From sequence record MN988561.1: a DNA stretch of 64,000 nucleotides; one strand, written 5' to 3'. Below the pieces are notes generated by a model. That model was given only the letters and a program-made list of their open reading frames with translations, had not been told where the DNA came from and searched no databases. The position numbers were made by a program, and so were the translations under genes. Shown here one piece after another: positions 7,833 to 18,134 of this stretch (position 1 is the stretch's first letter; each line of letters opens with the position of its first letter).

Positions 7833-7906
7833 CGGACGTAACTCAGAGGTAGAGTGCAATCCTTCCAAGTTTGAAGTCGTGGGTTCGATTCCCATCGTCC
7901 GCTCCA
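7832..7906 (+). tRNA. tRNA-Gly (UCC)
   Basis: Cloverleaf, ctTCCaa loop, U73-CCA. Confidence 0.95.
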
Positions 7907-7907
7907 T

Positions 7908-7984
7908 GCATCCTTAGCTCAGTTGGTTAGAGCATCAGTTTTACATACTGAGGGTCACTAGTTCAAGTCTAGTAGGATGTACCA
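7908..7984 (+). tRNA. tRNA-Val (UAC)
   Basis: Cloverleaf, ttTACat loop, CCA end. Confidence 0.95.
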
Positions 7985-11191: not shown

Positions 11192-11349
11192 GAATTGAAT
11201 GTTGAGGCTACCAGCATAGCCTCCATTCTCCGACTCCCATAGGGACAAACTCAGCCTTAAACTTATTGTGAGTATCAAGAATTTATCTTCTGCTCAAGAT
11301 AAACAAACTAGCTTTGTATCCCTAAAACTTAGACAAGATTTACCAGATC

Positions 11350-11494
11350 CAGTCGCAGCATATCTCTATTTTCCCGGAAGGTCGTGAGTTCGAGTCTCAT
11401 CACCGCACCCAATTACCTACAATTGGACTGATGCGGTGTAGCTCAGTGGTAGAGCGTTCGTTTTATCTTGAAGATATTCTGTCGATGATGACTG
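11350..11494 (+). ncRNA. circularly permuted tRNA-like RNA
   Basis: T arm 11384-11400, then acceptor 3-prime strand CACCGCA-C-CCA, a 20-nt linker, acceptor 5-prime strand TGCGGTG and D arm; closed by CAGCATATCT/AGATATTCTG and CAGTC/GACTG. Confidence 0.8.
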
Positions 11495-11645
11495 TATGAA
11501 TCTATCGTAACGATTAAATATGCTCCGCGATAGGAGTGTATGTTACATTAACAAGAACAGGGTGGTTCCATGCGGAATGTGGTTCCACCCACCTCTTCTT
11601 ATATAAGATCATTCGGATTTTATATAATAAGAATTTGAGGTTTAC

Positions 11646-13908: not shown

Positions 13909-14000
13909 GGATAGTTGGCTGAGTCTGGTCTAAGGCGCTCGACTTGAAATCGAGAGGACGTGAGAGCGTTCCGTGGGTTCGAATCCTACACTATCCGCCA
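13909..14000 (+). tRNA. tRNA-Ser (UGA)
   Basis: Cloverleaf, ctTGAaa loop, long variable arm, G73-CCA. Confidence 0.95.
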
Positions 14001-14018
14001 TATTTATTATTGAGTATA

Positions 14019-14405
14019 ATGGATCAAATAGTAAAGAAAAAGAGGACTAGACGTCCTGTTTCTTTAGAGACTAGAATGAAATTATCTGCTGCTCTTAAGG
14101 GTAAACCTCAGAGTAAAGTTTCTAATGAAGAGATTTTTGCAGATAATACTACTCATCCTAGACATCGTATTAAAGAAAGAATAATTCGAGATAATCTTAT
14201 TCCATACGAGTGTGCAATCTGTGAAAATGATGGTACATGGAATGGTGAACCTTTATCTTTACATCTAGACCATGAAAATGGTAAGAATAATGATAATCGT
14301 CTTGAGAATCTTAGATTCTTATGTCCTAACTGTCATAGTCAAACAGATACTTATGCAGGTAAGAATAAGAAACGTAAGAGAATCAAGAGAGAAGAGCGTG
14401 TTTAG
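14019..14405 (+). CDS. HNH homing endonuclease
   Basis: CAIC...LHLDHENGKNNDNRLENLRFLCPNCHSQT. The start was moved out of the tRNA to the Met at 14019. Confidence 0.9.
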   Translation: MDQIVKKKRTRRPVSLETRMKLSAALKGKPQSKVSNEEIFADNTTHPRHRIKERIIRDNLIPYECAICENDGTWNGEPLSLHLDHENGKNNDNRLENLRFLCPNCHSQTDTYAGKNKKRKRIKREERV

Positions 14406-14505: not shown

Positions 14506-15150
14506 ATGTCAAAAGCAAGAGATTTACTTAATACCTTGAATGAAGCTGATGATTGGAATATTCACAAGAAAGAGTTGAAGAAGGCTGGATTTGATCTCCA
14601 TCCTAATCATCACGCTAATGTGAATATCAATCGTAACAACTATCCTCAGAATCGTGATATCTATACGGGTAAAATGAGTAATGGTCATACGATGGTTATT
14701 ACTCAATTAACTCCGATTGATATGGATCGATACGCATCTGTTAAGGATGCTTCTGGTAAATTTATCAAGCACTACTACGTAGCTCCTGTTAAACCTACAC
14801 TGAGTAAAAGTCCTGTATTAAAGTCTACAGCGATCGGTAATGATCCTAAGACAGTACTTGAAGAAATCAAAGCAGCTATGAGAATGGTTCCAGAAGGACG
14901 TCAGGCTACCTTTAGATCTGTTGAACAGAATGGTAAGTACTATGAGTTCGATGTCAGATACTGGGGAAGCTGGGAAGTTCCTGATGGTGAAGACGATGAT
15001 GGAGACTACGACTTTGAAGTCTTGACATCTAAATCGTCTAAGTCACTTCAGAACATTGTTGAGCCTATCATTAAGAAATATCCAAGTCTAGATATCTACT
15101 ATCAAACTGGAGAGAAGAATTATATTACTGTTCATGCTACTGTAAAGTAG
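14506..15150 (+). CDS. hypothetical protein with MSKA...LNE N-terminal peptide
   Basis: 214 aa ORF; shared N-terminal motif. Confidence 0.8.
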   Translation: MSKARDLLNTLNEADDWNIHKKELKKAGFDLHPNHHANVNINRNNYPQNRDIYTGKMSNGHTMVITQLTPIDMDRYASVKDASGKFIKHYYVAPVKPTLSKSPVLKSTAIGNDPKTVLEEIKAAMRMVPEGRQATFRSVEQNGKYYEFDVRYWGSWEVPDGEDDDGDYDFEVLTSKSSKSLQNIVEPIIKKYPSLDIYYQTGEKNYITVHATVK

Positions 15151-15160
15151 TTGACAGTAT

Positions 15161-15245
15161 GTCGGTATGGCGGAATTGGTAGACGCCCTGGTTTTAGGTA
15201 CCAGTGTCGAAAGACGTGTAGGTTCGAGTCCTATTACCGACACCA
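15161..15245 (+). tRNA. tRNA-Leu (UAG)
   Basis: Cloverleaf, ttTAGgt loop, long variable arm, CCA end. Confidence 0.95.
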
Positions 15246-15251
15246 AATTAT

Positions 15252-15386
15252 GACTTGATGTTGCGAAAGAAATGGTTACTTCGTATTCCAAACGAGAAAT
15301 GTAGGTATCGAATCCTGCTATCCTAATAGGATATCGTCTAAGATAGGACGCTAAAATTTCCATTTCTGACACTATCTCATCAAGTC
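15252..15386 (+). ncRNA. Y-RNA-like unit 1 (permuted tRNA module)
   Basis: GACTTGATG/CATCAAGTC stem, GTTGCGA...ATCTC, TTACTTCG; T arm precedes TATCC/GGATA acceptor and D arm. Confidence 0.8.
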
Positions 15387-15394
15387 TCATATTC

Positions 15395-15477
15395 AGATCT
15401 TGACGTTGCGACTAGTATCGGATACTTCGCTTTGGTTGCTAAAAACTCCGATGCAATATACTATCTCGTCAAGATCT
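15395..15477 (+). ncRNA. Y-RNA-like unit 2 (no tRNA module)
   Basis: AGATCTTGACG/CGTCAAGATCT stem, GTTGCGA...ATCTC, TACTTCG, short loop. Confidence 0.75.
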
Positions 15478-15487
15478 TTCAGTTTAT

Positions 15488-15632
15488 CCTAACGTTGCGA
15501 ATTAAACAGTTACTTCGATATCAAGCAGAAGGTCAATGGTTCGAATCCATTCATGCGACACGCGTTGCATGTAGCTCAGTTGGTTAGAGCGTCCGCCACC
15601 ACAAGATCTGTTTAAGTCATTATCTCGTTAGG
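15488..15632 (+). ncRNA. Y-RNA-like unit 3 (permuted tRNA module)
   Basis: CCTAACG/CGTTAGG stem; T arm AATGG-TTCGAAT-CCATT, looped acceptor CATGCGA/TTGCATG, D arm TAGCTCAGTTGGTTAGAGC. Confidence 0.85.
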
Positions 15633-15641
15633 TCCTTATAA

Positions 15642-15786
15642 CCTAGTGTTGCGATCGGTACAACTTCATCGCATTGTAAGCCCTGTGTCATTGGTTCAAA
15701 TCCAATTCCTCCGTCCATCTATCGGAGGATAGCTCAGTCTGGTAGAGCAAGGAAAGTATGTTGTATCAATATACCATCTCACTAGG
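15642..15786 (+). ncRNA. Y-RNA-like unit 4 (permuted tRNA module, internal CCA)
   Basis: CCTAGTG/CACTAGG stem; T arm, TCCTCCG-T-CCA, CGGAGGA, D arm. Confidence 0.85.
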
Positions 15787-15924
15787 ATCCTTATCTCATC
15801 CACCAACCTCGGTGTAAGAGTGGAAAGAGTTACGTGATCGTATGAGAATACGATCACAGTCATTTAGGTCATGTACCATGTGTACAAGGATCATTCGAAG
15901 GTGCTCGTCATCTTCAGCAAATAA

Positions 15925-16068
15925 TGTAGAGTTGCGAATATATCAAGTTCATCGCTTACCATATACCAAGCGGGTAGCTCAGTGGTTAGAGCACTAGGAT
16001 GTAACAGTCGTAGAGGTCGTCGGTTCGAATCCGACTCTAACTTCTTGATATAGACTTATCTCTCTACA
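15925..16068 (+). ncRNA. Y-RNA-like unit 5 (D arm before T arm)
   Basis: TGTAGAG/CTCTACA stem, GTTGCGA...ATCTC; the tRNA arms are in normal order and the acceptor pairs poorly. Confidence 0.8.
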
Positions 16069-16077
16069 ACTTTTATA

Positions 16078-16212
16078 TGTACTGTTGCGACTAATACGGT
16101 TACTTCGTTGCAAATGAAACATAGGTTCGAATCCTATCCAGAGGATTGTCGTAAGATGACATCTGGCTGAGCATTGGTGAGCTCATCTCCGTATTAACTA
16201 CATCTCAGTACA
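16078..16212 (+). ncRNA. Y-RNA-like unit 6 (permuted tRNA module)
   Basis: TGTACTG/CAGTACA stem; ATAGG-TTCGAAT-CCTAT, CCAGA/TCTGG, GAGC/GCTC D arm. Confidence 0.85.
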
Positions 16213-16222
16213 ATTACAATTC

Positions 16223-16379
16223 GTACCGTTGCGAATGATATGAATACATCGCTGTAGAACCGACGTCGTAAGACATGCTAGTTCAAGTCTAGCTCTCCGT
16301 CCCAATACTATGACGGAGATGGTGAAATTGGTAGACACATCGGTAGATAAATCTTCATATCGGCTTACAATCTCGGTAT
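16223..16379 (+). ncRNA. Y-RNA-like unit 7 (near-complete permuted Leu-type tRNA)
   Basis: GTACCG/CGGTAT stem; CTGTAGA-ACCGA, long variable arm, T arm, TCTCCGT-C-CCA, ACGGAGA, Leu-type D arm, TCGGT. Confidence 0.85.
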
Positions 16380-16388
16380 ATCTTAGAC

Positions 16389-16413
16389 GCTATGTTGCGA
16401 TAGTCCTCATAGC
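16389..16413 (+). promoter_or_regulatory. mini GTTGCGA hairpin in the Ro60 gene leader
   Basis: GCTATG-TTGCGA-TAGTCCT-CATAGC; ends 20 nt before the ATG. Confidence 0.5.
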
Positions 16414-16433
16414 ATTATCATAGGGAAAATGTC

Positions 16434-18002
16434 ATGGCTTCGATCAATAATAAGTCAGTTGCTAATCTTGCACGTACGGTTGCTCCTAAGGCAGTTGTAG
16501 CACCTCGTACATTCACTGGTTTATCTCATAACATTCGTAACAATAATGGTGCGATGGCGTATGATATCACTCCTATCGAGCAATTGAGACGTACTGTTCT
16601 CTCTTGCATGCTCTGGGAGGATTCTGCATATGAGTCTGGTGAACAGATTGCTAATCGTATTGAAAGATTGATCGGAGAGTGTGATCCCTCTGATGTAGCA
16701 CATCTTGCTCGTGAAGCAAGACATATCATGAAGCTACGTCATGTTCCTCTCTTTATGTGCATCACGATGCTGAAGTATCCCGAACATAAGAAATATGTTC
16801 GTAAGACACTCGCATCAGTTATTGAGCGTCCTGATGAGCTTGGTCAAGCTCTCGCTCTCTACTGGAAGGATGCTCTTTCTCCTGCTCGTACTACTGAAGA
16901 TACTGAAATCGGACCTCGAGTTACTTACGTTTCTCAGAGAAAGTCTGATCTGAATCTTCCTCTCCAACTACGTAGAGGTCTTGAAGATGCTCTACAGAAG
17001 TTTGACTCTTATCAGTTGAAGAAGTACCTTATGAAGGACAAGCCTGTCTCTATGGCTGACATTCTTCGTATCGTCCACCCTAAGGGTAAGACTGATGAGA
17101 TCAAAGCTACCTATGGCGAAATCGTCAAGGGTACTGCTACTGCACCTGATACATGGGAGTCTCGTCTCTCATCTTCTGGTAGATCTGAGAAAGCTACAAT
17201 CTTCACAGATATGCTCGAACGTAACAAATTAGGTGCAATGGCTCTACTGAAGAATCTGCGTGGTATGACTGAGGCTGGTGTTGATACCAATCTTATTAAT
17301 ACTGCGATTCAGAAGATGAATACTGAACGTGTTCTTCCTTTCAGATTCCTCACAGCTGCTCGTCATGCTCCTCAGTTCAAGTCTAGTCTCGGTGAGGCTA
17401 TGCTAAAATCTCTGAAGGACATTCAGAATCTGCCTGGTCATACAGTACTACTGATTGACATCTCAGGTAGTATGGGTGGACGTATTTCAGGTAAGTCTGA
17501 TCTGAGACGTATTGATGCTGCAGCTGCTATTGCTATCATGTTGAAGGAAATTTGTCAGTCTTCTGATATGTTTGTCTTCAATTATGGTACGTATCAAGTA
17601 CGTAACGATAACGTCTTCTGCGTGAATCAACCTACTGCTAACAATCACGGATACTCCAGGATTGTTGAGAGTACGAGGATCTACAATTACGAAGAAGATG
17701 CTGTAGTGAAGAGAGGATTTGATCTATCAGATCTTATCGTCAATTCAGTAGTTGGTGGAACTGATCTCCAGCAAGCTGTCAGTTACATCAATAATACTGT
17801 AGAGTATGATCGTATGATTATCTTTACAGATGACGAATCATCTACTGTTCCGCCAGCTCCTAGAGGTCTTTCCTATTCGATCAATGTATCGACTGGAAAC
17901 TATGGAGTGACGTACGGTGATTATGTCCACATCAACGGATTCTCTGAAGGTGTGATCGGCTATGTCACTGAGTACGACAAGTACGTGAAGAGTCAGAATT
18001 AA
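16434..18002 (+). CDS. rsr: Ro60/TROVE domain RNA-binding protein (TROVE + vWA)
   Basis: LRHVPL, IERPDEL, PDTWESRLSS, LGAMALLKNLRGM, RVLPFRFLTAA and LIDISGSM motifs typical of Ro60 orthologues. Confidence 0.93.
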   Translation: MASINNKSVANLARTVAPKAVVAPRTFTGLSHNIRNNNGAMAYDITPIEQLRRTVLSCMLWEDSAYESGEQIANRIERLIGECDPSDVAHLAREARHIMKLRHVPLFMCITMLKYPEHKKYVRKTLASVIERPDELGQALALYWKDALSPARTTEDTEIGPRVTYVSQRKSDLNLPLQLRRGLEDALQKFDSYQLKKYLMKDKPVSMADILRIVHPKGKTDEIKATYGEIVKGTATAPDTWESRLSSSGRSEKATIFTDMLERNKLGAMALLKNLRGMTEAGVDTNLINTAIQKMNTERVLPFRFLTAARHAPQFKSSLGEAMLKSLKDIQNLPGHTVLLIDISGSMGGRISGKSDLRRIDAAAAIAIMLKEICQSSDMFVFNYGTYQVRNDNVFCVNQPTANNHGYSRIVESTRIYNYEEDAVVKRGFDLSDLIVNSVVGGTDLQQAVSYINNTVEYDRMIIFTDDESSTVPPAPRGLSYSINVSTGNYGVTYGDYVHINGFSEGVIGYVTEYDKYVKSQN

Positions 18003-18050
18003 GTAGTGAGAATTGGGAGTGAAATACCTCCCAATTCCATTTATCTAAAT

Positions 18051-18134
18051 GCCCACTTGATGGAATTGGTAGACATAAGGCACTTAAAATGCCTAGCTTA
18101 ATGCGTACCGGTTCGAGTCCGGTAGTGGGTACCA
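18051..18134 (+). tRNA. tRNA-Leu (UAA)
   Basis: Cloverleaf, ctTAAaa loop, CCA end. Confidence 0.95.

What the first reader, a model, noticed from the sequence alone, without database searches (positions are those of the whole stretch)
15252..18002. Array of seven Y-RNA-like genes built from different tRNA scaffolds, directly upstream of a phage Ro60 (TROVE) gene
SEEN: seven tandem units (15252-16379). Each is closed by its own 6-11 bp terminal stem, with invariant GTTGCGA on the 5-prime strand and ATCTC on the 3-prime strand. A second variable stem follows, then a TTACTTCG/TTCATCG-like motif, then a payload. The stems differ in sequence but keep pairing. Five payloads are circularly permuted tRNA modules (T arm, looped acceptor stem, D arm), one has the normal arm order and one is empty. 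D arms differ in type (GTCTAAG, TAGCTCAG, Leu-type GGTAGAC). The rsr ATG is 55 nt after unit 7. ESTABLISHED: Ro60/Rsr binds the bulged stem of Y RNAs; bacterial YrlA RNAs lie next to rsr and carry a tRNA-like module; in Deinococcus the Y RNA tethers Rsr to PNPase; in Salmonella rsr-yrl sits in the rtcBA RNA-repair operon. Loci I know have one or two Y RNAs. INFERENCE: this is a modular library of Ro60 adaptors or tRNA decoys, each recruiting a different tRNA-recognising enzyme or baiting host anticodon nucleases that would otherwise attack the adjacent phage tRNAs.
Basis: partly seen in the sequence, partly recalled or inferred. Interest (0 to 1): 0.95.

Follow-up and report, generated by a model that had tools for sequence, protein, structure and literature searches.

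The report
Seven-unit phage Y RNA array
A Rhizobium phage carries seven different small tRNA-mimicking "Y RNA" genes in a row in front of its Ro60 RNA-binding protein gene, and my survey shows that such unannotated arrays are common next to this protein in phages and bacteria, though what the RNAs do is still unknown.

Summary
Window 15252-16379 (+) holds seven tandem units. Each is closed by its own stem and carries GTTGCGA on the 5' side and ATCTC on the 3' side. A second unit-specific stem and a YUAC-like motif follow. The units lie 54 nt upstream of a genuine Ro60/Rsr gene (16434-18002).

Five units (U1, U3, U4, U6, U7) have the canonical YrlA layout: T arm, closed acceptor stem, D arm. 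A covariance model built only from other phages' units finds them at 36-91 bits. U2 is a minimal unit. U5 carries a D arm, an anticodon-like arm and a T arm in normal order.

The "permuted tRNA" design is not new; it defines YrlA (Chen 2014). The array is not unique either. Caulobacter phage CcrColossus has 8 units. Eighty IMG/VR loci and 80 bacterial loci mostly hold 2-4 units (range 0-7). None are annotated, and Rfam's YrlA threshold misses all those I tested.

Points that appear new:
- The size and mixed content of the array.
- A U·U variant of the Ro-site pair.
- Mosaic payloads that share arms with the phage's own tRNAs.
- Fast payload turnover with compensatory changes.

Function is inferred only. 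Ro60 adaptors acting on tRNA/RNA metabolism are most likely. A role as cleavable bait for anticodon nucleases is unlikely, because no unit has an anticodon loop.

The parts
15161..15245 (+). tRNA-Leu(UAG). It sits 6 nt upstream of U1 on the same strand and is the likely upstream neighbour in a shared precursor transcript.
   Evidence: ARAGORN; Rfam tRNA 53.7 bits.
15252..15386 (+). U1, a YrlA-type Y RNA. Stem 1 is 9 bp and stem 2 is AGAAAUGG/CCAUUUCU, followed by UUACUUCG. The T arm has an 8-nt loop, the acceptor-like hairpin is 6 bp, and the D arm is Glu-like (CGUCUAAGAUAGGACG).
   Evidence: R1 63.6 bits, E 7e-14, full length; fold z -4.26.
15395..15477 (+). U2, a minimal Y RNA of 83 nt. Stem 1 is 11 bp and stem 2 is 8 bp, followed by UACUUCG and a 17-nt A-rich loop. 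It has no tRNA-like module.
   Evidence: fold z -4.20. Only its core matches the short-unit model R2 (14.8 bits, E 0.004, filters off).
15488..15632 (+). U3, a YrlA-type Y RNA and the most canonical unit. It has T arm AAUGG-UUCGAAU-CCAUU and a 7-8 bp closed acceptor stem. Its D arm UAGCUCAGUUGGUUAGAGC is identical over 19 nt to that of phage tRNA-Val.
   Evidence: R1 90.8 bits, E 1e-20; Rfam YrlA 36.2 bits, full length. Compensatory T-stem change against Y65.
15642..15786 (+). U4, a YrlA-type Y RNA. Its T arm resembles that of tRNA-Ile. The 7-bp acceptor-like stem UCCUCCG/CGGAGGA is followed by U-CCA and a 5-nt linker. The D arm is canonical.
   Evidence: R1 63.5 bits; Rfam YrlA 37.3 bits; NCCA offset analysis; fold z -3.61.
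15787..15924 (+). Structured 138-nt spacer with four predicted hairpins. It has no Y-RNA scaffold and its role is unknown.
   Evidence: Fold z -3.07. Hairpin 15897-15915 keeps its pairing through two double changes against Y65.
15925..16068 (+). U5, a Y scaffold carrying a tRNA-like body in normal order: V-like hairpin, D arm, 7-bp anticodon-like stem with a 6-nt loop, and T arm. It has no acceptor stem.
   Evidence: Rfam tRNA 33.9 bits over model positions 6-65; no ARAGORN call. Compensatory change in the anticodon-like stem against Y65.
16078..16212 (+). U6, a YrlA-type Y RNA. Its T arm is identical over 15 nt to that of tRNA-Tyr. The acceptor-like hairpin is long and branched, and the D arm is atypical, with a 5-bp stem.
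   Evidence: R1 51.9 bits, E 6e-11.
16223..16379 (+). U7, a YrlA-type Y RNA. Its T arm is identical over 15 nt to that of tRNA-Val. The acceptor-like stem is 8 bp and the D loop is Leu-like (AAAUUGGUAGAC). This unit diverges most between strains.
   Evidence: R1 36.4 bits, E 4e-7. 14.6% divergence from Y65 with a compensatory D-stem change.
16380..16433 (+). rsr leader. It holds an eighth GTTGCGA (16394-16400) in the loop of a GCUAUG/CAUAGC hairpin. There is no partner ATCTC or terminal stem.
   Evidence: the sequence is identical in Y65.
16434..18002 (+). rsr, a Ro60/TROVE protein of 522 aa with a vWA domain and a DxSxS MIDAS motif.
   Evidence: Pfam TROVE E 2.8e-13; PDB phiLo Ro60 E 1.7e-12. 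AlphaFold model pLDDT 79.8; the 13 best Foldseek PDB matches are all Ro60/Rsr. MIDAS residues D342, S344 and S346 are invariant.
18010..18037 (+). Terminator-like hairpin after rsr, a possible 3' boundary or processing site.
18051..18134 (+). tRNA-Leu(UAA) flanking the locus downstream.
   Evidence: 16 clustered differences in sister phages.
11347..11497 (+). Orphan YrlA-like unit about 4 kb upstream. It has T arm, closed acceptor stem and D arm inside two nested stems, but lacks GTTGCGA/ATCTC.
   Evidence: R1 38.8 bits, E 1e-7, full length. It lies in an ORF-free 454-nt gap.

Best explanation
**What it is.** The locus is a Ro60-Y RNA module of a Rhizobium phage (Cuauhnahuacvirus, RHph_TM40 group). 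It is embedded in the phage's same-strand tRNA island.

**Proposed mechanism (inferred).**
1. The seven units are transcribed together with the flanking tRNAs and rsr.
2. The precursor is cut in the 8-10-nt AU-rich spacers.
3. This yields seven discrete Y RNAs.

**The constant module.** It consists of the terminal stem, a bulged U, a U·U and G-C step, an internal loop with 5'-GCGA, a second stem and a YUAC motif. It is the counterpart of the Ro60-binding bulged helix and should dock each RNA on the phage Ro60.

**The variable module.** It presents a different tRNA-shaped body in each unit:
- five with T-loop/D-loop elbows and a closed acceptor stem;
- one with D arm, anticodon-like arm and T arm;
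- one with no tRNA-like body.

**Likely function.** By analogy with Deinococcus, Salmonella and Thermus phage phiLo, the RNPs most likely couple Ro60 to host 3'-5' exoribonuclease (PNPase) and to tRNA-recognising factors. The phage would thereby gain a set of specialised RNA-surveillance or decay particles. These would act on tRNA or structured RNA during infection.

**What is shown.** Anatomy, homology, covariation and the Ro60 fold.

**What is inferred.** Co-transcription, processing, Ro60 binding and partner recruitment.
For: **Identity.**
- A covariance model built only from 26 units of other phage Ro60 loci hits U3, U1, U4, U6 and U7 full length at 90.8, 63.6, 63.5, 51.9 and 36.4 bits. 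In that alignment 30 of 33 pairs show compensatory changes.
- Rfam YrlA gives local E about 1e-6 for U3 and U4.
- Every unit has perfect unit-specific stems.

**The Ro-site is a real helix.**
- Across other loci the second residue of the 5' motif covaries with the last residue of the 3' motif: UGG[CU]G...UUCC versus UAG[CU]G...UUCU.
- All seven window units carry U·U at that position.

**Protein.** The fold is Ro60 and the MIDAS motif is intact.

**Selection on structure.** Against phage Y65 the changes keep pairing in the U3 T stem (A-U to C-G), the U5 anticodon-like stem (U-A to C-G) and the U7 D stem (U-A to G-C).

**Generality.**
- All 158 model hits in 56 phage loci lie on the rsr strand.
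- Arrays of 2-8 units occur in phages and bacteria.

**Layout.** No terminator-like site was found between tRNA-Leu(UAG) and the end of rsr.

**Published precedent.**
- phiLo Ro60 binds two upstream Yrl RNAs and host PNPase (PMC12135203).
Against: - There are no expression, processing or binding data for this phage.
- All units fall far below Rfam's YrlA gathering score (about 37 bits against 69).
- U2 and U5 are not found by the independent model R1.
- The published 5' motif GNCGAAN0-1G is matched only as UGCGA(A/C/U).
- No PNPase, RtcB or RtcA gene is annotated in the window, so any partner must come from the host.
- Nothing in the sequence says which partner each payload recruits.
- Bas63's Ro60-like gp130 counters the Ppl defence when expressed alone (bioRxiv 10.1101/2024.10.10.617714). 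A phage Ro60 can therefore act without its own Y RNAs.
Confidence: 0.6

Rival explanations
1. The units are tRNA-body mimics that act as sponges or competitive inhibitors. They would occupy host proteins that recognise the tRNA elbow or acceptor end. Such proteins include tRNA-targeting defence nucleases or toxins, and modification or processing enzymes. Ro60 would mainly cap and stabilise the RNAs. The diversity of the array would then reflect an arms race.
For: - Payload sequences turn over quickly between 97%-identical phages. U3, U5 and U7 differ by 11%, 5.6% and 14.6%, against 1.4% for rsr and at most 1.2% for U1, U2, U4 and U6. The scaffold stays invariant and the arms stay paired.
- The payloads are mosaics of arms shared with different phage tRNAs.
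- U4 has an acceptor-like stem followed by NCCA. This feature occurs in 22 of 156 long units elsewhere, against about 1/64 expected.
- Competitive inhibition of an anticodon nuclease by YrlA has been proposed (PMC7790460).
- A phage Ro60-like protein counters a defence system (bioRxiv 10.1101/2024.10.10.617714).
Against: - The YrlA-type units have no anticodon arm, and U5's loop is 5-6 nt and variable. They cannot be substrates of anticodon-loop nucleases.
- Similar arrays sit next to rsr in bacterial chromosomes, including Bradyrhizobium and Acidobacteria. An anti-defence role is not obvious there.
- The neighbouring real tRNA-Leu(UAA) shows the same clustered variation. Turnover may therefore reflect recombination among tRNA-like sequences rather than selection.
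- In Bas63 the protein alone sufficed.
Confidence: 0.2
2. The locus is a quality-control module for the phage's own tRNA island. Ro60 would capture misfolded or mis-processed phage pre-tRNAs through their 3' ends and hand them to an exonuclease. The Y RNAs would gate the Ro60 cavity, and their number would simply buffer Ro60 activity.
For: - rsr lies inside or at the head of same-strand tRNA islands in unrelated phages. This window has 20 tRNAs. IMG/VR loci L077, L059 and L042 have 25, 18 and 8 tRNAs. Bas63 is arranged the same way. Microcystis phage Mvi-JY20 and the Brevundimonas phages show the same association.
- Established knowledge: Ro60 binds misfolded ncRNAs in its cavity, and Y RNAs gate access.
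Against: - About two thirds of the viral loci examined have no tRNA within 3 kb.
- Simple gating does not explain seven diversified payloads, nor why payload structure is conserved.
Confidence: 0.15
3. The units are not functional RNAs. They are decayed or rearranged tRNA genes, or merely a long structured 5' UTR of rsr.
For: - The units share arms with phage tRNAs.
- No promoter or terminator separates the units.
- None is annotated.
Against: - The scaffold motifs are invariant in all seven units.
- Both stems are perfect and unit-specific.
- Compensatory changes are seen between strains.
- The same two-stem scaffold with strong covariation occurs in more than 150 loci, always on the rsr strand.
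Confidence: 0.05

Closest known systems
YrlA RNAs of Salmonella Typhimurium and Mycobacterium smegmatis (Rfam RF02553; Chen et al. 2014, PMC4201824)
   Same: - They lie upstream of and on the same strand as rsr.
- They have a 5' Ro-site motif with a CGA core and a YUAY motif.
- They have a tRNA-like domain ordered T arm, closed acceptor stem, D arm.
- The phage units U1, U3, U4, U6 and U7 have this layout.
   Different: - The 5' motif is GUUGCGA rather than GNCGAAN0-1G, and both strands of the Ro-site helix are recognisable.
- The best Rfam score is about 37 bits against a threshold of 69.
- There are seven units rather than one or two.
- The arms are mosaics of the phage's own tRNAs.
- There is no rtcBA operon.
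Thermus phage phiLo Ro60 with Yrl1 and Yrl2 (PMC12135203; PDB 9KOP, 9L5Y)
   Same: - It is a phage Ro60 with Y-like RNAs encoded directly upstream.
- It is the closest solved structure (phmmer E 1.7e-12; Foldseek E 6e-18).
- It provides a precedent for binding host PNPase.
   Different: - It has two RNAs identified by a CGAA motif, not seven.
- As far as the text I read goes, no tRNA-like payload diversity is described.
- The protein is about 20% identical over the structural alignment.
Deinococcus radiodurans rsr locus (Yrn1, Yrn2 and further upstream small RNAs)
   Same: - Several small RNAs are encoded upstream of rsr.
- Both strands of the Ro-site helix are retained.
- In Yrn1 the stem-loop between the D-like and T arms takes the anticodon-arm position, as in U5.
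   Different: - Up to four RNAs, and only some bind Rsr well (PMC4201824).
- The sequences are unrelated.
- The context is a bacterial stress response.
Unannotated arrays next to related Ro60 genes in other phages (this study): Caulobacter phage CcrColossus, Brevundimonas phages, Xanthomonas phage 10KY502B, crAss001
   Same: - The two-stem scaffold is the same (UGG[CU]G[UA]A ... YUACUUC ... GUUCC).
- Short and YrlA-type units are mixed.
- Arrays hold 5-8 units.
- D arms vary and include Leu-like types in the rsr-proximal unit of CcrColossus and Bambus.
   Different: - Those arrays have a G-C or A-U pair where the Rhizobium phage has U·U.
- In crAss001 the array lies downstream of the gene.
- None has a U5-type unit among those I read.
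Escherichia phage Bas63 gp130 (bioRxiv 10.1101/2024.10.10.617714)
   Same: - It is a Ro60-like gene at the head of a same-strand tRNA island.
- It is the only phage Ro60-type gene with a reported phenotype: it counters the Ppl defence.
   Different: - It has no detectable sequence similarity to this Rsr (BLASTP E 1.8).
- The protein alone was sufficient.
- Only one weak YrlA-core-like hit lies nearby.

Membership tests
YrlA / bacterial Y RNA (Chen et al. 2014; Rfam RF02553) | Encoded within 4 kb of a Ro60/Rsr gene and on the same strand | tested here: met
   The units lie 54-1180 nt upstream of rsr on the + strand.
YrlA / bacterial Y RNA (Chen et al. 2014; Rfam RF02553) | 5' motif GNCGAAN0-1G, the presumed Ro60 contact | tested here: inconclusive
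   All units have (G)UUGCGA followed by A, C or U. The CGA core is present and CGAA occurs in 4 of 7. The first G of the published motif is U.
YrlA / bacterial Y RNA (Chen et al. 2014; Rfam RF02553) | tRNA-like domain ordered T arm, acceptor-like stem-loop, D arm, preceded by YUAY | tested here: met
   Met for U1, U3, U4, U6 and U7. Not met for U2 (no domain) or U5 (D arm before T arm).
YrlA / bacterial Y RNA (Chen et al. 2014; Rfam RF02553) | Score at or above Rfam's gathering threshold (69 bits) | tested here: not met
   No hit at the gathering threshold. Best scores are 37.3 bits (U4) and 36.2 bits (U3). The threshold also misses every unit in the 20 bacterial loci I tested.
YrlA / bacterial Y RNA (Chen et al. 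2014; Rfam RF02553) | Expressed as a discrete RNA and bound by Rsr | not testable with these tools
   This needs RNA-seq, RIP or EMSA.
Phage/alphaproteobacterial/acidobacterial Y-RNA clade defined here (model R1) | Full-length match to a covariance model built without window sequences | tested here: met
   U3 90.8, U1 63.6, U4 63.5, U6 51.9 and U7 36.4 bits, all covering model positions 1-134. U2 and U5 are not matched.
Short (payload-less) Y-like units of the same clade (model R2) | Full-length match to the short-unit model | tested here: inconclusive
   U2 is not found with default filters. With filters off, only its stem 2, UACUUC and A-rich loop core match (14.8 bits, E 0.004). This is the top hit in the 5 kb searched.
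Ro60/Rsr protein | TROVE/HEAT-repeat ring plus a vWA domain with a MIDAS motif | tested here: met
   Pfam TROVE scores 50.3 bits against a cut-off of 23. The DxSxS residues are invariant in 31 relatives. The 13 best Foldseek matches are all Ro60/Rsr over more than 500 columns, TM 0.51-0.64.
Functional tRNA (considered for U5) | Acceptor stem with a free 3' end and a 7-nt anticodon loop | tested here: not met
   ARAGORN makes no call. The Rfam hit covers model positions 6-65 only. The loop has 6 nt here and 5 nt in Y65.
rsr-yrlBA-rtcBA RNA-repair operon (Salmonella type) | RtcB ligase and RtcA cyclase genes adjacent to rsr | tested here: not met
   The deposited annotation of the identical phage shows tRNAs, homing endonucleases and DNA-replication genes. 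It shows no RtcB or RtcA. This rests on that annotation, not on my own domain scan of every ORF.
RYPER-type complex (Ro60-Y RNA-PNPase) | Y RNA tethers Ro60 to PNPase | not testable with these tools
   No PNPase gene is annotated in the window, so host PNPase would be needed. The precedent is in phiLo (PMC12135203).

The most novel reading that the evidence does not exclude
Arrays next to Ro60 may be rapidly diversifying libraries of tRNA-body mimics. Some units, such as U4, would be cut in the acceptor loop to expose a genuine NCCA end. The RNAs would act as RNA-based inhibitors of host tRNA-targeting immunity or toxins, with Ro60 as their protective chaperone. This would be an RNA counter-defence class shared by many phage lineages.
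Probability: 0.15. Interest if true: 0.85.

Novelty: new variant of a known kind. Interest (0 to 1): 0.6.

Why it matters
Y RNAs and Ro60 have been known for decades, yet the purpose of the bacterial tRNA-like module is still unsettled.

- **A natural experiment.** One constant Ro60-docking scaffold carries seven different payloads: a minimal one, five permuted tRNA bodies and one in normal order. Sister phages differ almost only in some payloads.
- **Generality.** Multi-unit arrays turn out to be the rule next to this Ro60 clade, in phages from crAss-like to jumbo and in soil bacteria. They are invisible to current annotation and to Rfam's threshold.
- **A workable system.** The phage is cultivable and grows on laboratory rhizobia. 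This gives a tractable system and a covariance-model starting point for asking what Y RNA payloads recruit.
- **Open question.** It also allows a test of whether phage Ro60 modules serve tRNA quality control, RNA decay or counter-defence.

Tried and rejected
- **Rfam at the gathering threshold.** It finds only tRNAs in the window and no YrlA in 20 bacterial loci. It is useless for this clade.
- **Short-unit model R2.** It did not recover U2 full length. The window's divergent Ro-site costs too much score.
- **Model R1 on U2 and U5.** It finds neither.
- **Promoter and terminator scan.** Counts match those of shuffled sequence, so it gives no information on transcription units.
- **The 138-nt spacer.** I looked for a repeated motif, such as a phage promoter, by 9-mer matches across the window and found none.
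- **An operator in rsr leaders.** TTGCG[AG] also occurs in the leaders of CcrColossus and Xanthomonas phage 10KY502B, but not in Gurke. There is no consistent pattern, so I left it as unexplained.
- **'Leu identity' of U7.** I rejected it because the D loop differs in Y65.
- **Units as tRNA-tRNA junction artefacts.** The model does hit the real Gly-Val junction at 7851-7950. I rejected this reading for the array because no tRNAs are called there and the Y scaffold encloses each unit.
- **Literature access.** The supplement of Chen 2014, which lists YrlAs per phage, and the two Wolin-lab reviews could not be read. I cannot exclude that multi-copy phage loci are tabulated there.
- **Technical.**
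I redid it with IMG/VR relatives.
  - The first large alignment served only to move sequences into the scripting sandbox.

Full report
**Source.** The window is 100% identical over 15100-18100 to Rhizobium phages RHph_TM40, TM2_3B, TM3_3_6, TM21B and TM61. It is 97% identical to RHph_Y65. These are about 207-kb phages of the family Kleczkowskaviridae, genus Cuauhnahuacvirus. In the deposited records the stretch between tRNA-Leu(UAG) and the 'TROVE domain-containing protein' carries no feature at all.

- GTTGCGA occurs eight times on the + strand between 15260 and 16400. The whole window has 16 on both strands against 3.8 expected, and no shuffle reaches that number.
- Seven copies are matched by a downstream ATCTC and a flanking complementary stem. 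This defines U1 15252-15386, U2 15395-15477, U3 15488-15632, U4 15642-15786, U5 15925-16068, U6 16078-16212 and U7 16223-16379.
- The first G of GTTGCGA pairs with the last C of ATCTC, so terminal stems are 6-11 bp.
- A second 8-9-bp stem follows after 1-3 nt, then UUACUUCG, AUACUUCG, UUCAUCG or AUACAUCG.
- Both stems differ in sequence between units (46% and 34% identity). Each unit's own strands nevertheless pair at 35/35 and 49/49 positions, while strands from different units pair at only 60% and 46%.
- Thermodynamic folding alone recovers the nested stems and the internal arms. The z-scores run from -4.3 to -1.7 for U1-U6.
- Spacers are 8-10 nt and AU-rich, except for a structured 138-nt stretch between U4 and U5.

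**The gene downstream is a real Ro60.**
- ORF 16434-18002 (522 aa) scores 50.3 bits on Pfam TROVE against a cut-off of 23.
- It matches the Thermus phage phiLo Ro60 chains at E 1.7e-12.
- It keeps the DxSxS MIDAS motif that is invariant in 31 relatives.
- An AlphaFold model (pLDDT 79.8) has as its 13 best PDB matches only Ro60/Rsr structures: phiLo, Xenopus, human and Deinococcus. They align over more than 500 columns.

**What the units are.**
- Chen et al. (PMC4201824) define YrlA RNAs by four features: position next to rsr; a 5' GNCGAAN0-1G motif; a YUAY motif; and a tRNA-like domain ordered T arm, closed acceptor stem, D arm. That design is therefore the known hallmark of the family.
- Rfam's YrlA model gives only sub-threshold hits: U3 36.2 bits full length and U4 37.3 bits, against a threshold of 69.
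- I therefore made an independent test. I collected units from other phage Ro60 loci (see below) and aligned 26 YrlA-type ones, none from this phage. RNAalifold found compensatory changes in 30 of 33 predicted pairs.
- I built model R1 from that alignment and searched the window. It hits U3 (90.8 bits, E 1e-20), U1 (63.6), U4 (63.5), U6 (51.9) and U7 (36.4), each over the full model.
- U2 (83 nt) has the complete scaffold but only a 17-nt A-rich loop. About half of all units in other loci are of this short kind. A model of those short units matches only U2's core (14.8 bits, E 0.004, filters off).
- U5 carries the scaffold around a V-like hairpin, a canonical D arm, a 7-bp anticodon-like stem with a 6-nt loop, and a T arm. 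It has no acceptor stem. Rfam tRNA scores 33.9 bits over positions 6-65, and ARAGORN calls nothing there. This topology recalls Deinococcus Yrn1. I did not see it in the other loci I read.

**The Ro-site.**
- In the wider family the terminal stem is followed by a bulged U, two pairs and an internal loop. The consensus is UGG[CU]G[UA]A on the 5' side and GUUCC on the 3' side.
- The first of those two pairs covaries between loci: UGG...UUCC against UAG...UUCU. It is therefore a true pair.
- All seven window units have U·U at that position (GUUGCGA/AUCUC). This is a lineage-specific variant that the phage Ro60 presumably tolerates or requires.

**Arrays are common.** Unannotated gaps of about 1 kb precede or follow the Ro60 gene in distant phages, and they contain tandem units with the same scaffold.
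- Caulobacter phage CcrColossus has 8 units.
- Brevundimonas phage Gurke has about 6 and Bambus at least 5.
- Xanthomonas phage 10KY502B has about 5, in a genome of only 43 kb.
- crAss001 has at least 3 detected units, possibly about 5, downstream of its gene.
- My stem-plus-motif detector found 214 units on the rsr strand and 8 on the opposite strand across all phage-side loci held at that point (window, Y65, 8 annotated phages and 80 IMG/VR loci).
- In the 80 IMG/VR Ro60 loci it gave this distribution per locus: 0 units in 12 loci, 1 in 13, 2 in 30, 3 in 12, 4 in 9, 5 in 2, 6 in 1 and 7 in 1.
- R1 gave 158 hits at E<=1e-5 in 56 loci, all on the rsr strand.
- Eighty bacterial loci (Bradyrhizobium, Acidobacteriota, Hyphomonadaceae and others) gave 0 to 6 units per locus, mostly 2-4. 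There was one opposite-strand detection.
- Rfam at its threshold finds none of the units in the 20 bacterial loci I tested.

The searchable literature describes at most two Y-like RNAs in a phage (phiLo; PMC12135203). For bacteria it reports two Y RNAs in Deinococcus, plus two further upstream small RNAs that bind Rsr weakly. I found no description of such arrays. I could not read the supplementary tables of Chen 2014 or the Wolin-lab reviews.

**Payloads.**
- Arms are shared with the phage's own tRNAs in mosaic fashion:
  - U3 has the D arm of tRNA-Val (19 nt) and a T arm like that of tRNA-Cys.
  - U4 has a tRNA-Ile-like variable region and T arm (14 nt).
  - U5 has the T arm of one tRNA-Met and the D loop of the other.
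  - U6 has the T arm of tRNA-Tyr (15 nt).
  - U7 has the unusual T arm of tRNA-Val (15 nt) and a tRNA-Leu-like D loop.
- U1's D arm belongs to the Glu-like 'CGUCUA..GGAC' type, which recurs in other phages' units.
- U4's acceptor-like stem is exactly 7 bp and is followed by U-CCA, as in this phage's CCA-encoding tRNAs. NCCA at that offset occurs in 22 of 156 long units elsewhere, against about 1/64 expected, although many of those units are related. M. smegmatis YrlA is cut by RNase P and receives CCA. U4 may therefore mature into a nicked Y RNA with a tRNA-like 3' end. This is inference.

**Evolution.**
- Against Y65, rsr differs at 1.4% of positions.
- U1, U2, U4 and U6 differ at 0-1.2%.
- U3, U5 and U7 differ at 11%, 5.6% and 14.6%, almost all in the payload.
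- The changes keep structure. The U3 T stem changes A-U to C-G. The U5 anticodon-like stem changes U-A to C-G while its loop is replaced (6 nt to 5 nt). The U7 D stem changes U-A to G-C while its Leu-like loop becomes a different loop.
- The real tRNA-Leu(UAA) downstream shows similar clustered variation in three sister phages. The turnover may therefore reflect exchange among tRNA-like sequences as much as selection on the Y RNAs.

**Context.**
- The locus lies inside a same-strand island of 20 tRNAs, between tRNA-Leu(UAG) and tRNA-Leu(UAA), ahead of the DNA-replication genes.
- No RtcB, RtcA or PNPase gene is annotated in the window.
- Ro60 genes within tRNA islands recur in other phages: 17 of 48 IMG/VR loci have tRNAs within 3 kb, and some have 18-25. 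Bas63 is arranged the same way.
- No terminator-like site lies between tRNA-Leu(UAG) and the end of rsr, although the scan as a whole is no better than shuffled sequence.

**Mechanism.**
- Shown: a conserved protein-docking-type scaffold; diversified, structurally constrained tRNA-like payloads; and an adjacent intact Ro60.
- Inferred: co-transcription with the tRNAs, cutting in the AU-rich spacers, Ro60 binding through the bulged helix, and recruitment of host factors by the payloads.
- On this basis I favour a set of Ro60 adaptor RNPs acting on tRNA or structured-RNA metabolism.
- The decoy idea survives only as competitive inhibition (proposed in PMC7790460). The units lack an anticodon loop and so cannot be cleaved by anticodon nucleases.
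- A counter-defence role is plausible in principle, because Bas63's Ro60-like gp130 overcomes the Ppl system. That protein worked alone and shares no detectable sequence similarity with this Rsr.

**Verdict.** This is a real, well-formed and unusually large Y RNA array. It belongs to the known Ro60/YrlA kind. It is a new variant in array size, unit heterogeneity, Ro-site and payload dynamics. It also exposes a widespread class of unannotated arrays. Its function is open.

Noticed in passing
window 11347-11497 (+): A ninth, orphan YrlA-like unit lies in a 454-nt ORF-free gap of the tRNA island. It has T arm, closed acceptor stem with a 23-nt loop, and D arm inside two nested stems. A CUAUUUUC motif stands where the others have YUACUUC. 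It lacks GTTGCGA/ATCTC. R1 scores 38.8 bits, full length.
   Followed up: partly
window 15787-15924 (+): The 138-nt stretch between U4 and U5 folds into four hairpins (z -3.07). Hairpin 15897-15915 keeps its pairing through two double substitutions against phage Y65 (A-U to G-C and G-C to A-U). It is probably a functional RNA element of unknown role.
   Followed up: partly
window 16394-16400 (+), in the rsr leader 16380-16433: An eighth GTTGCGA sits in the loop of a GCUAUG/CAUAGC hairpin 34 nt before the rsr start codon. It has no ATCTC partner. It is identical in Y65. It could be a remnant of a unit or a Ro60 autoregulatory site.
   Followed up: partly
window 15703-15725 (+), within U4: The acceptor-like stem of U4 is 7 bp and is followed by U-CCA and a 5-nt linker, mimicking the CCA-encoding tRNAs of this phage. 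NCCA at the same offset occurs in 22 of 156 long units from other loci, including CcrColossus, Bambus and many Bradyrhizobium. This suggests that a subclass of units is cleaved to expose a tRNA-like 3' end.
   Followed up: partly
window 18051-18134 (+): tRNA-Leu(UAA) differs at 16 clustered positions in phages TM30, TM39 and Y65, while the neighbouring rsr differs by about 1%. This looks like an allelic replacement of a phage tRNA gene.
   Followed up: no
window 13944-14405 (+): An ORF with an HNH motif lies between tRNA-Ser(UGA) and tRNA-Trp. In phage Y65 those two tRNAs are only 3 nt apart. This looks like a strain-specific homing-endonuclease insertion in the tRNA island.
   Followed up: no
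L173 (Escherichia phage Bas63, MZ501086) 16811-16895: A T arm, acceptor, D arm core-like match (R1 35.6 bits) lies about 1 kb downstream of gp130, the Ro60-like anti-Ppl gene. It sits between annotated tRNAs, under two tiny opposite-strand ORFs. It may be the Y RNA whose existence the PhageMaP authors suspected.
   Followed up: no
L003 7789-8046 and L004 7357-7702 (Brevundimonas phages Bambus and Gurke): Permuted tmRNA genes (Rfam RF04321, about 58 bits) lie 2-3 kb downstream of the Ro60 gene, next to tRNA genes. IMG/VR locus L050 also has a tmRNA beside its Ro60 gene.
   Followed up: no
L046 661-850 and L086 2138-2332 (IMG/VR): Two unrelated viral contigs share a roughly 190-nt unit. It has the Y scaffold but a large, conserved payload of several hairpins that is not tRNA-like. 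This payload class is neither YrlA-type nor minimal.
   Followed up: no
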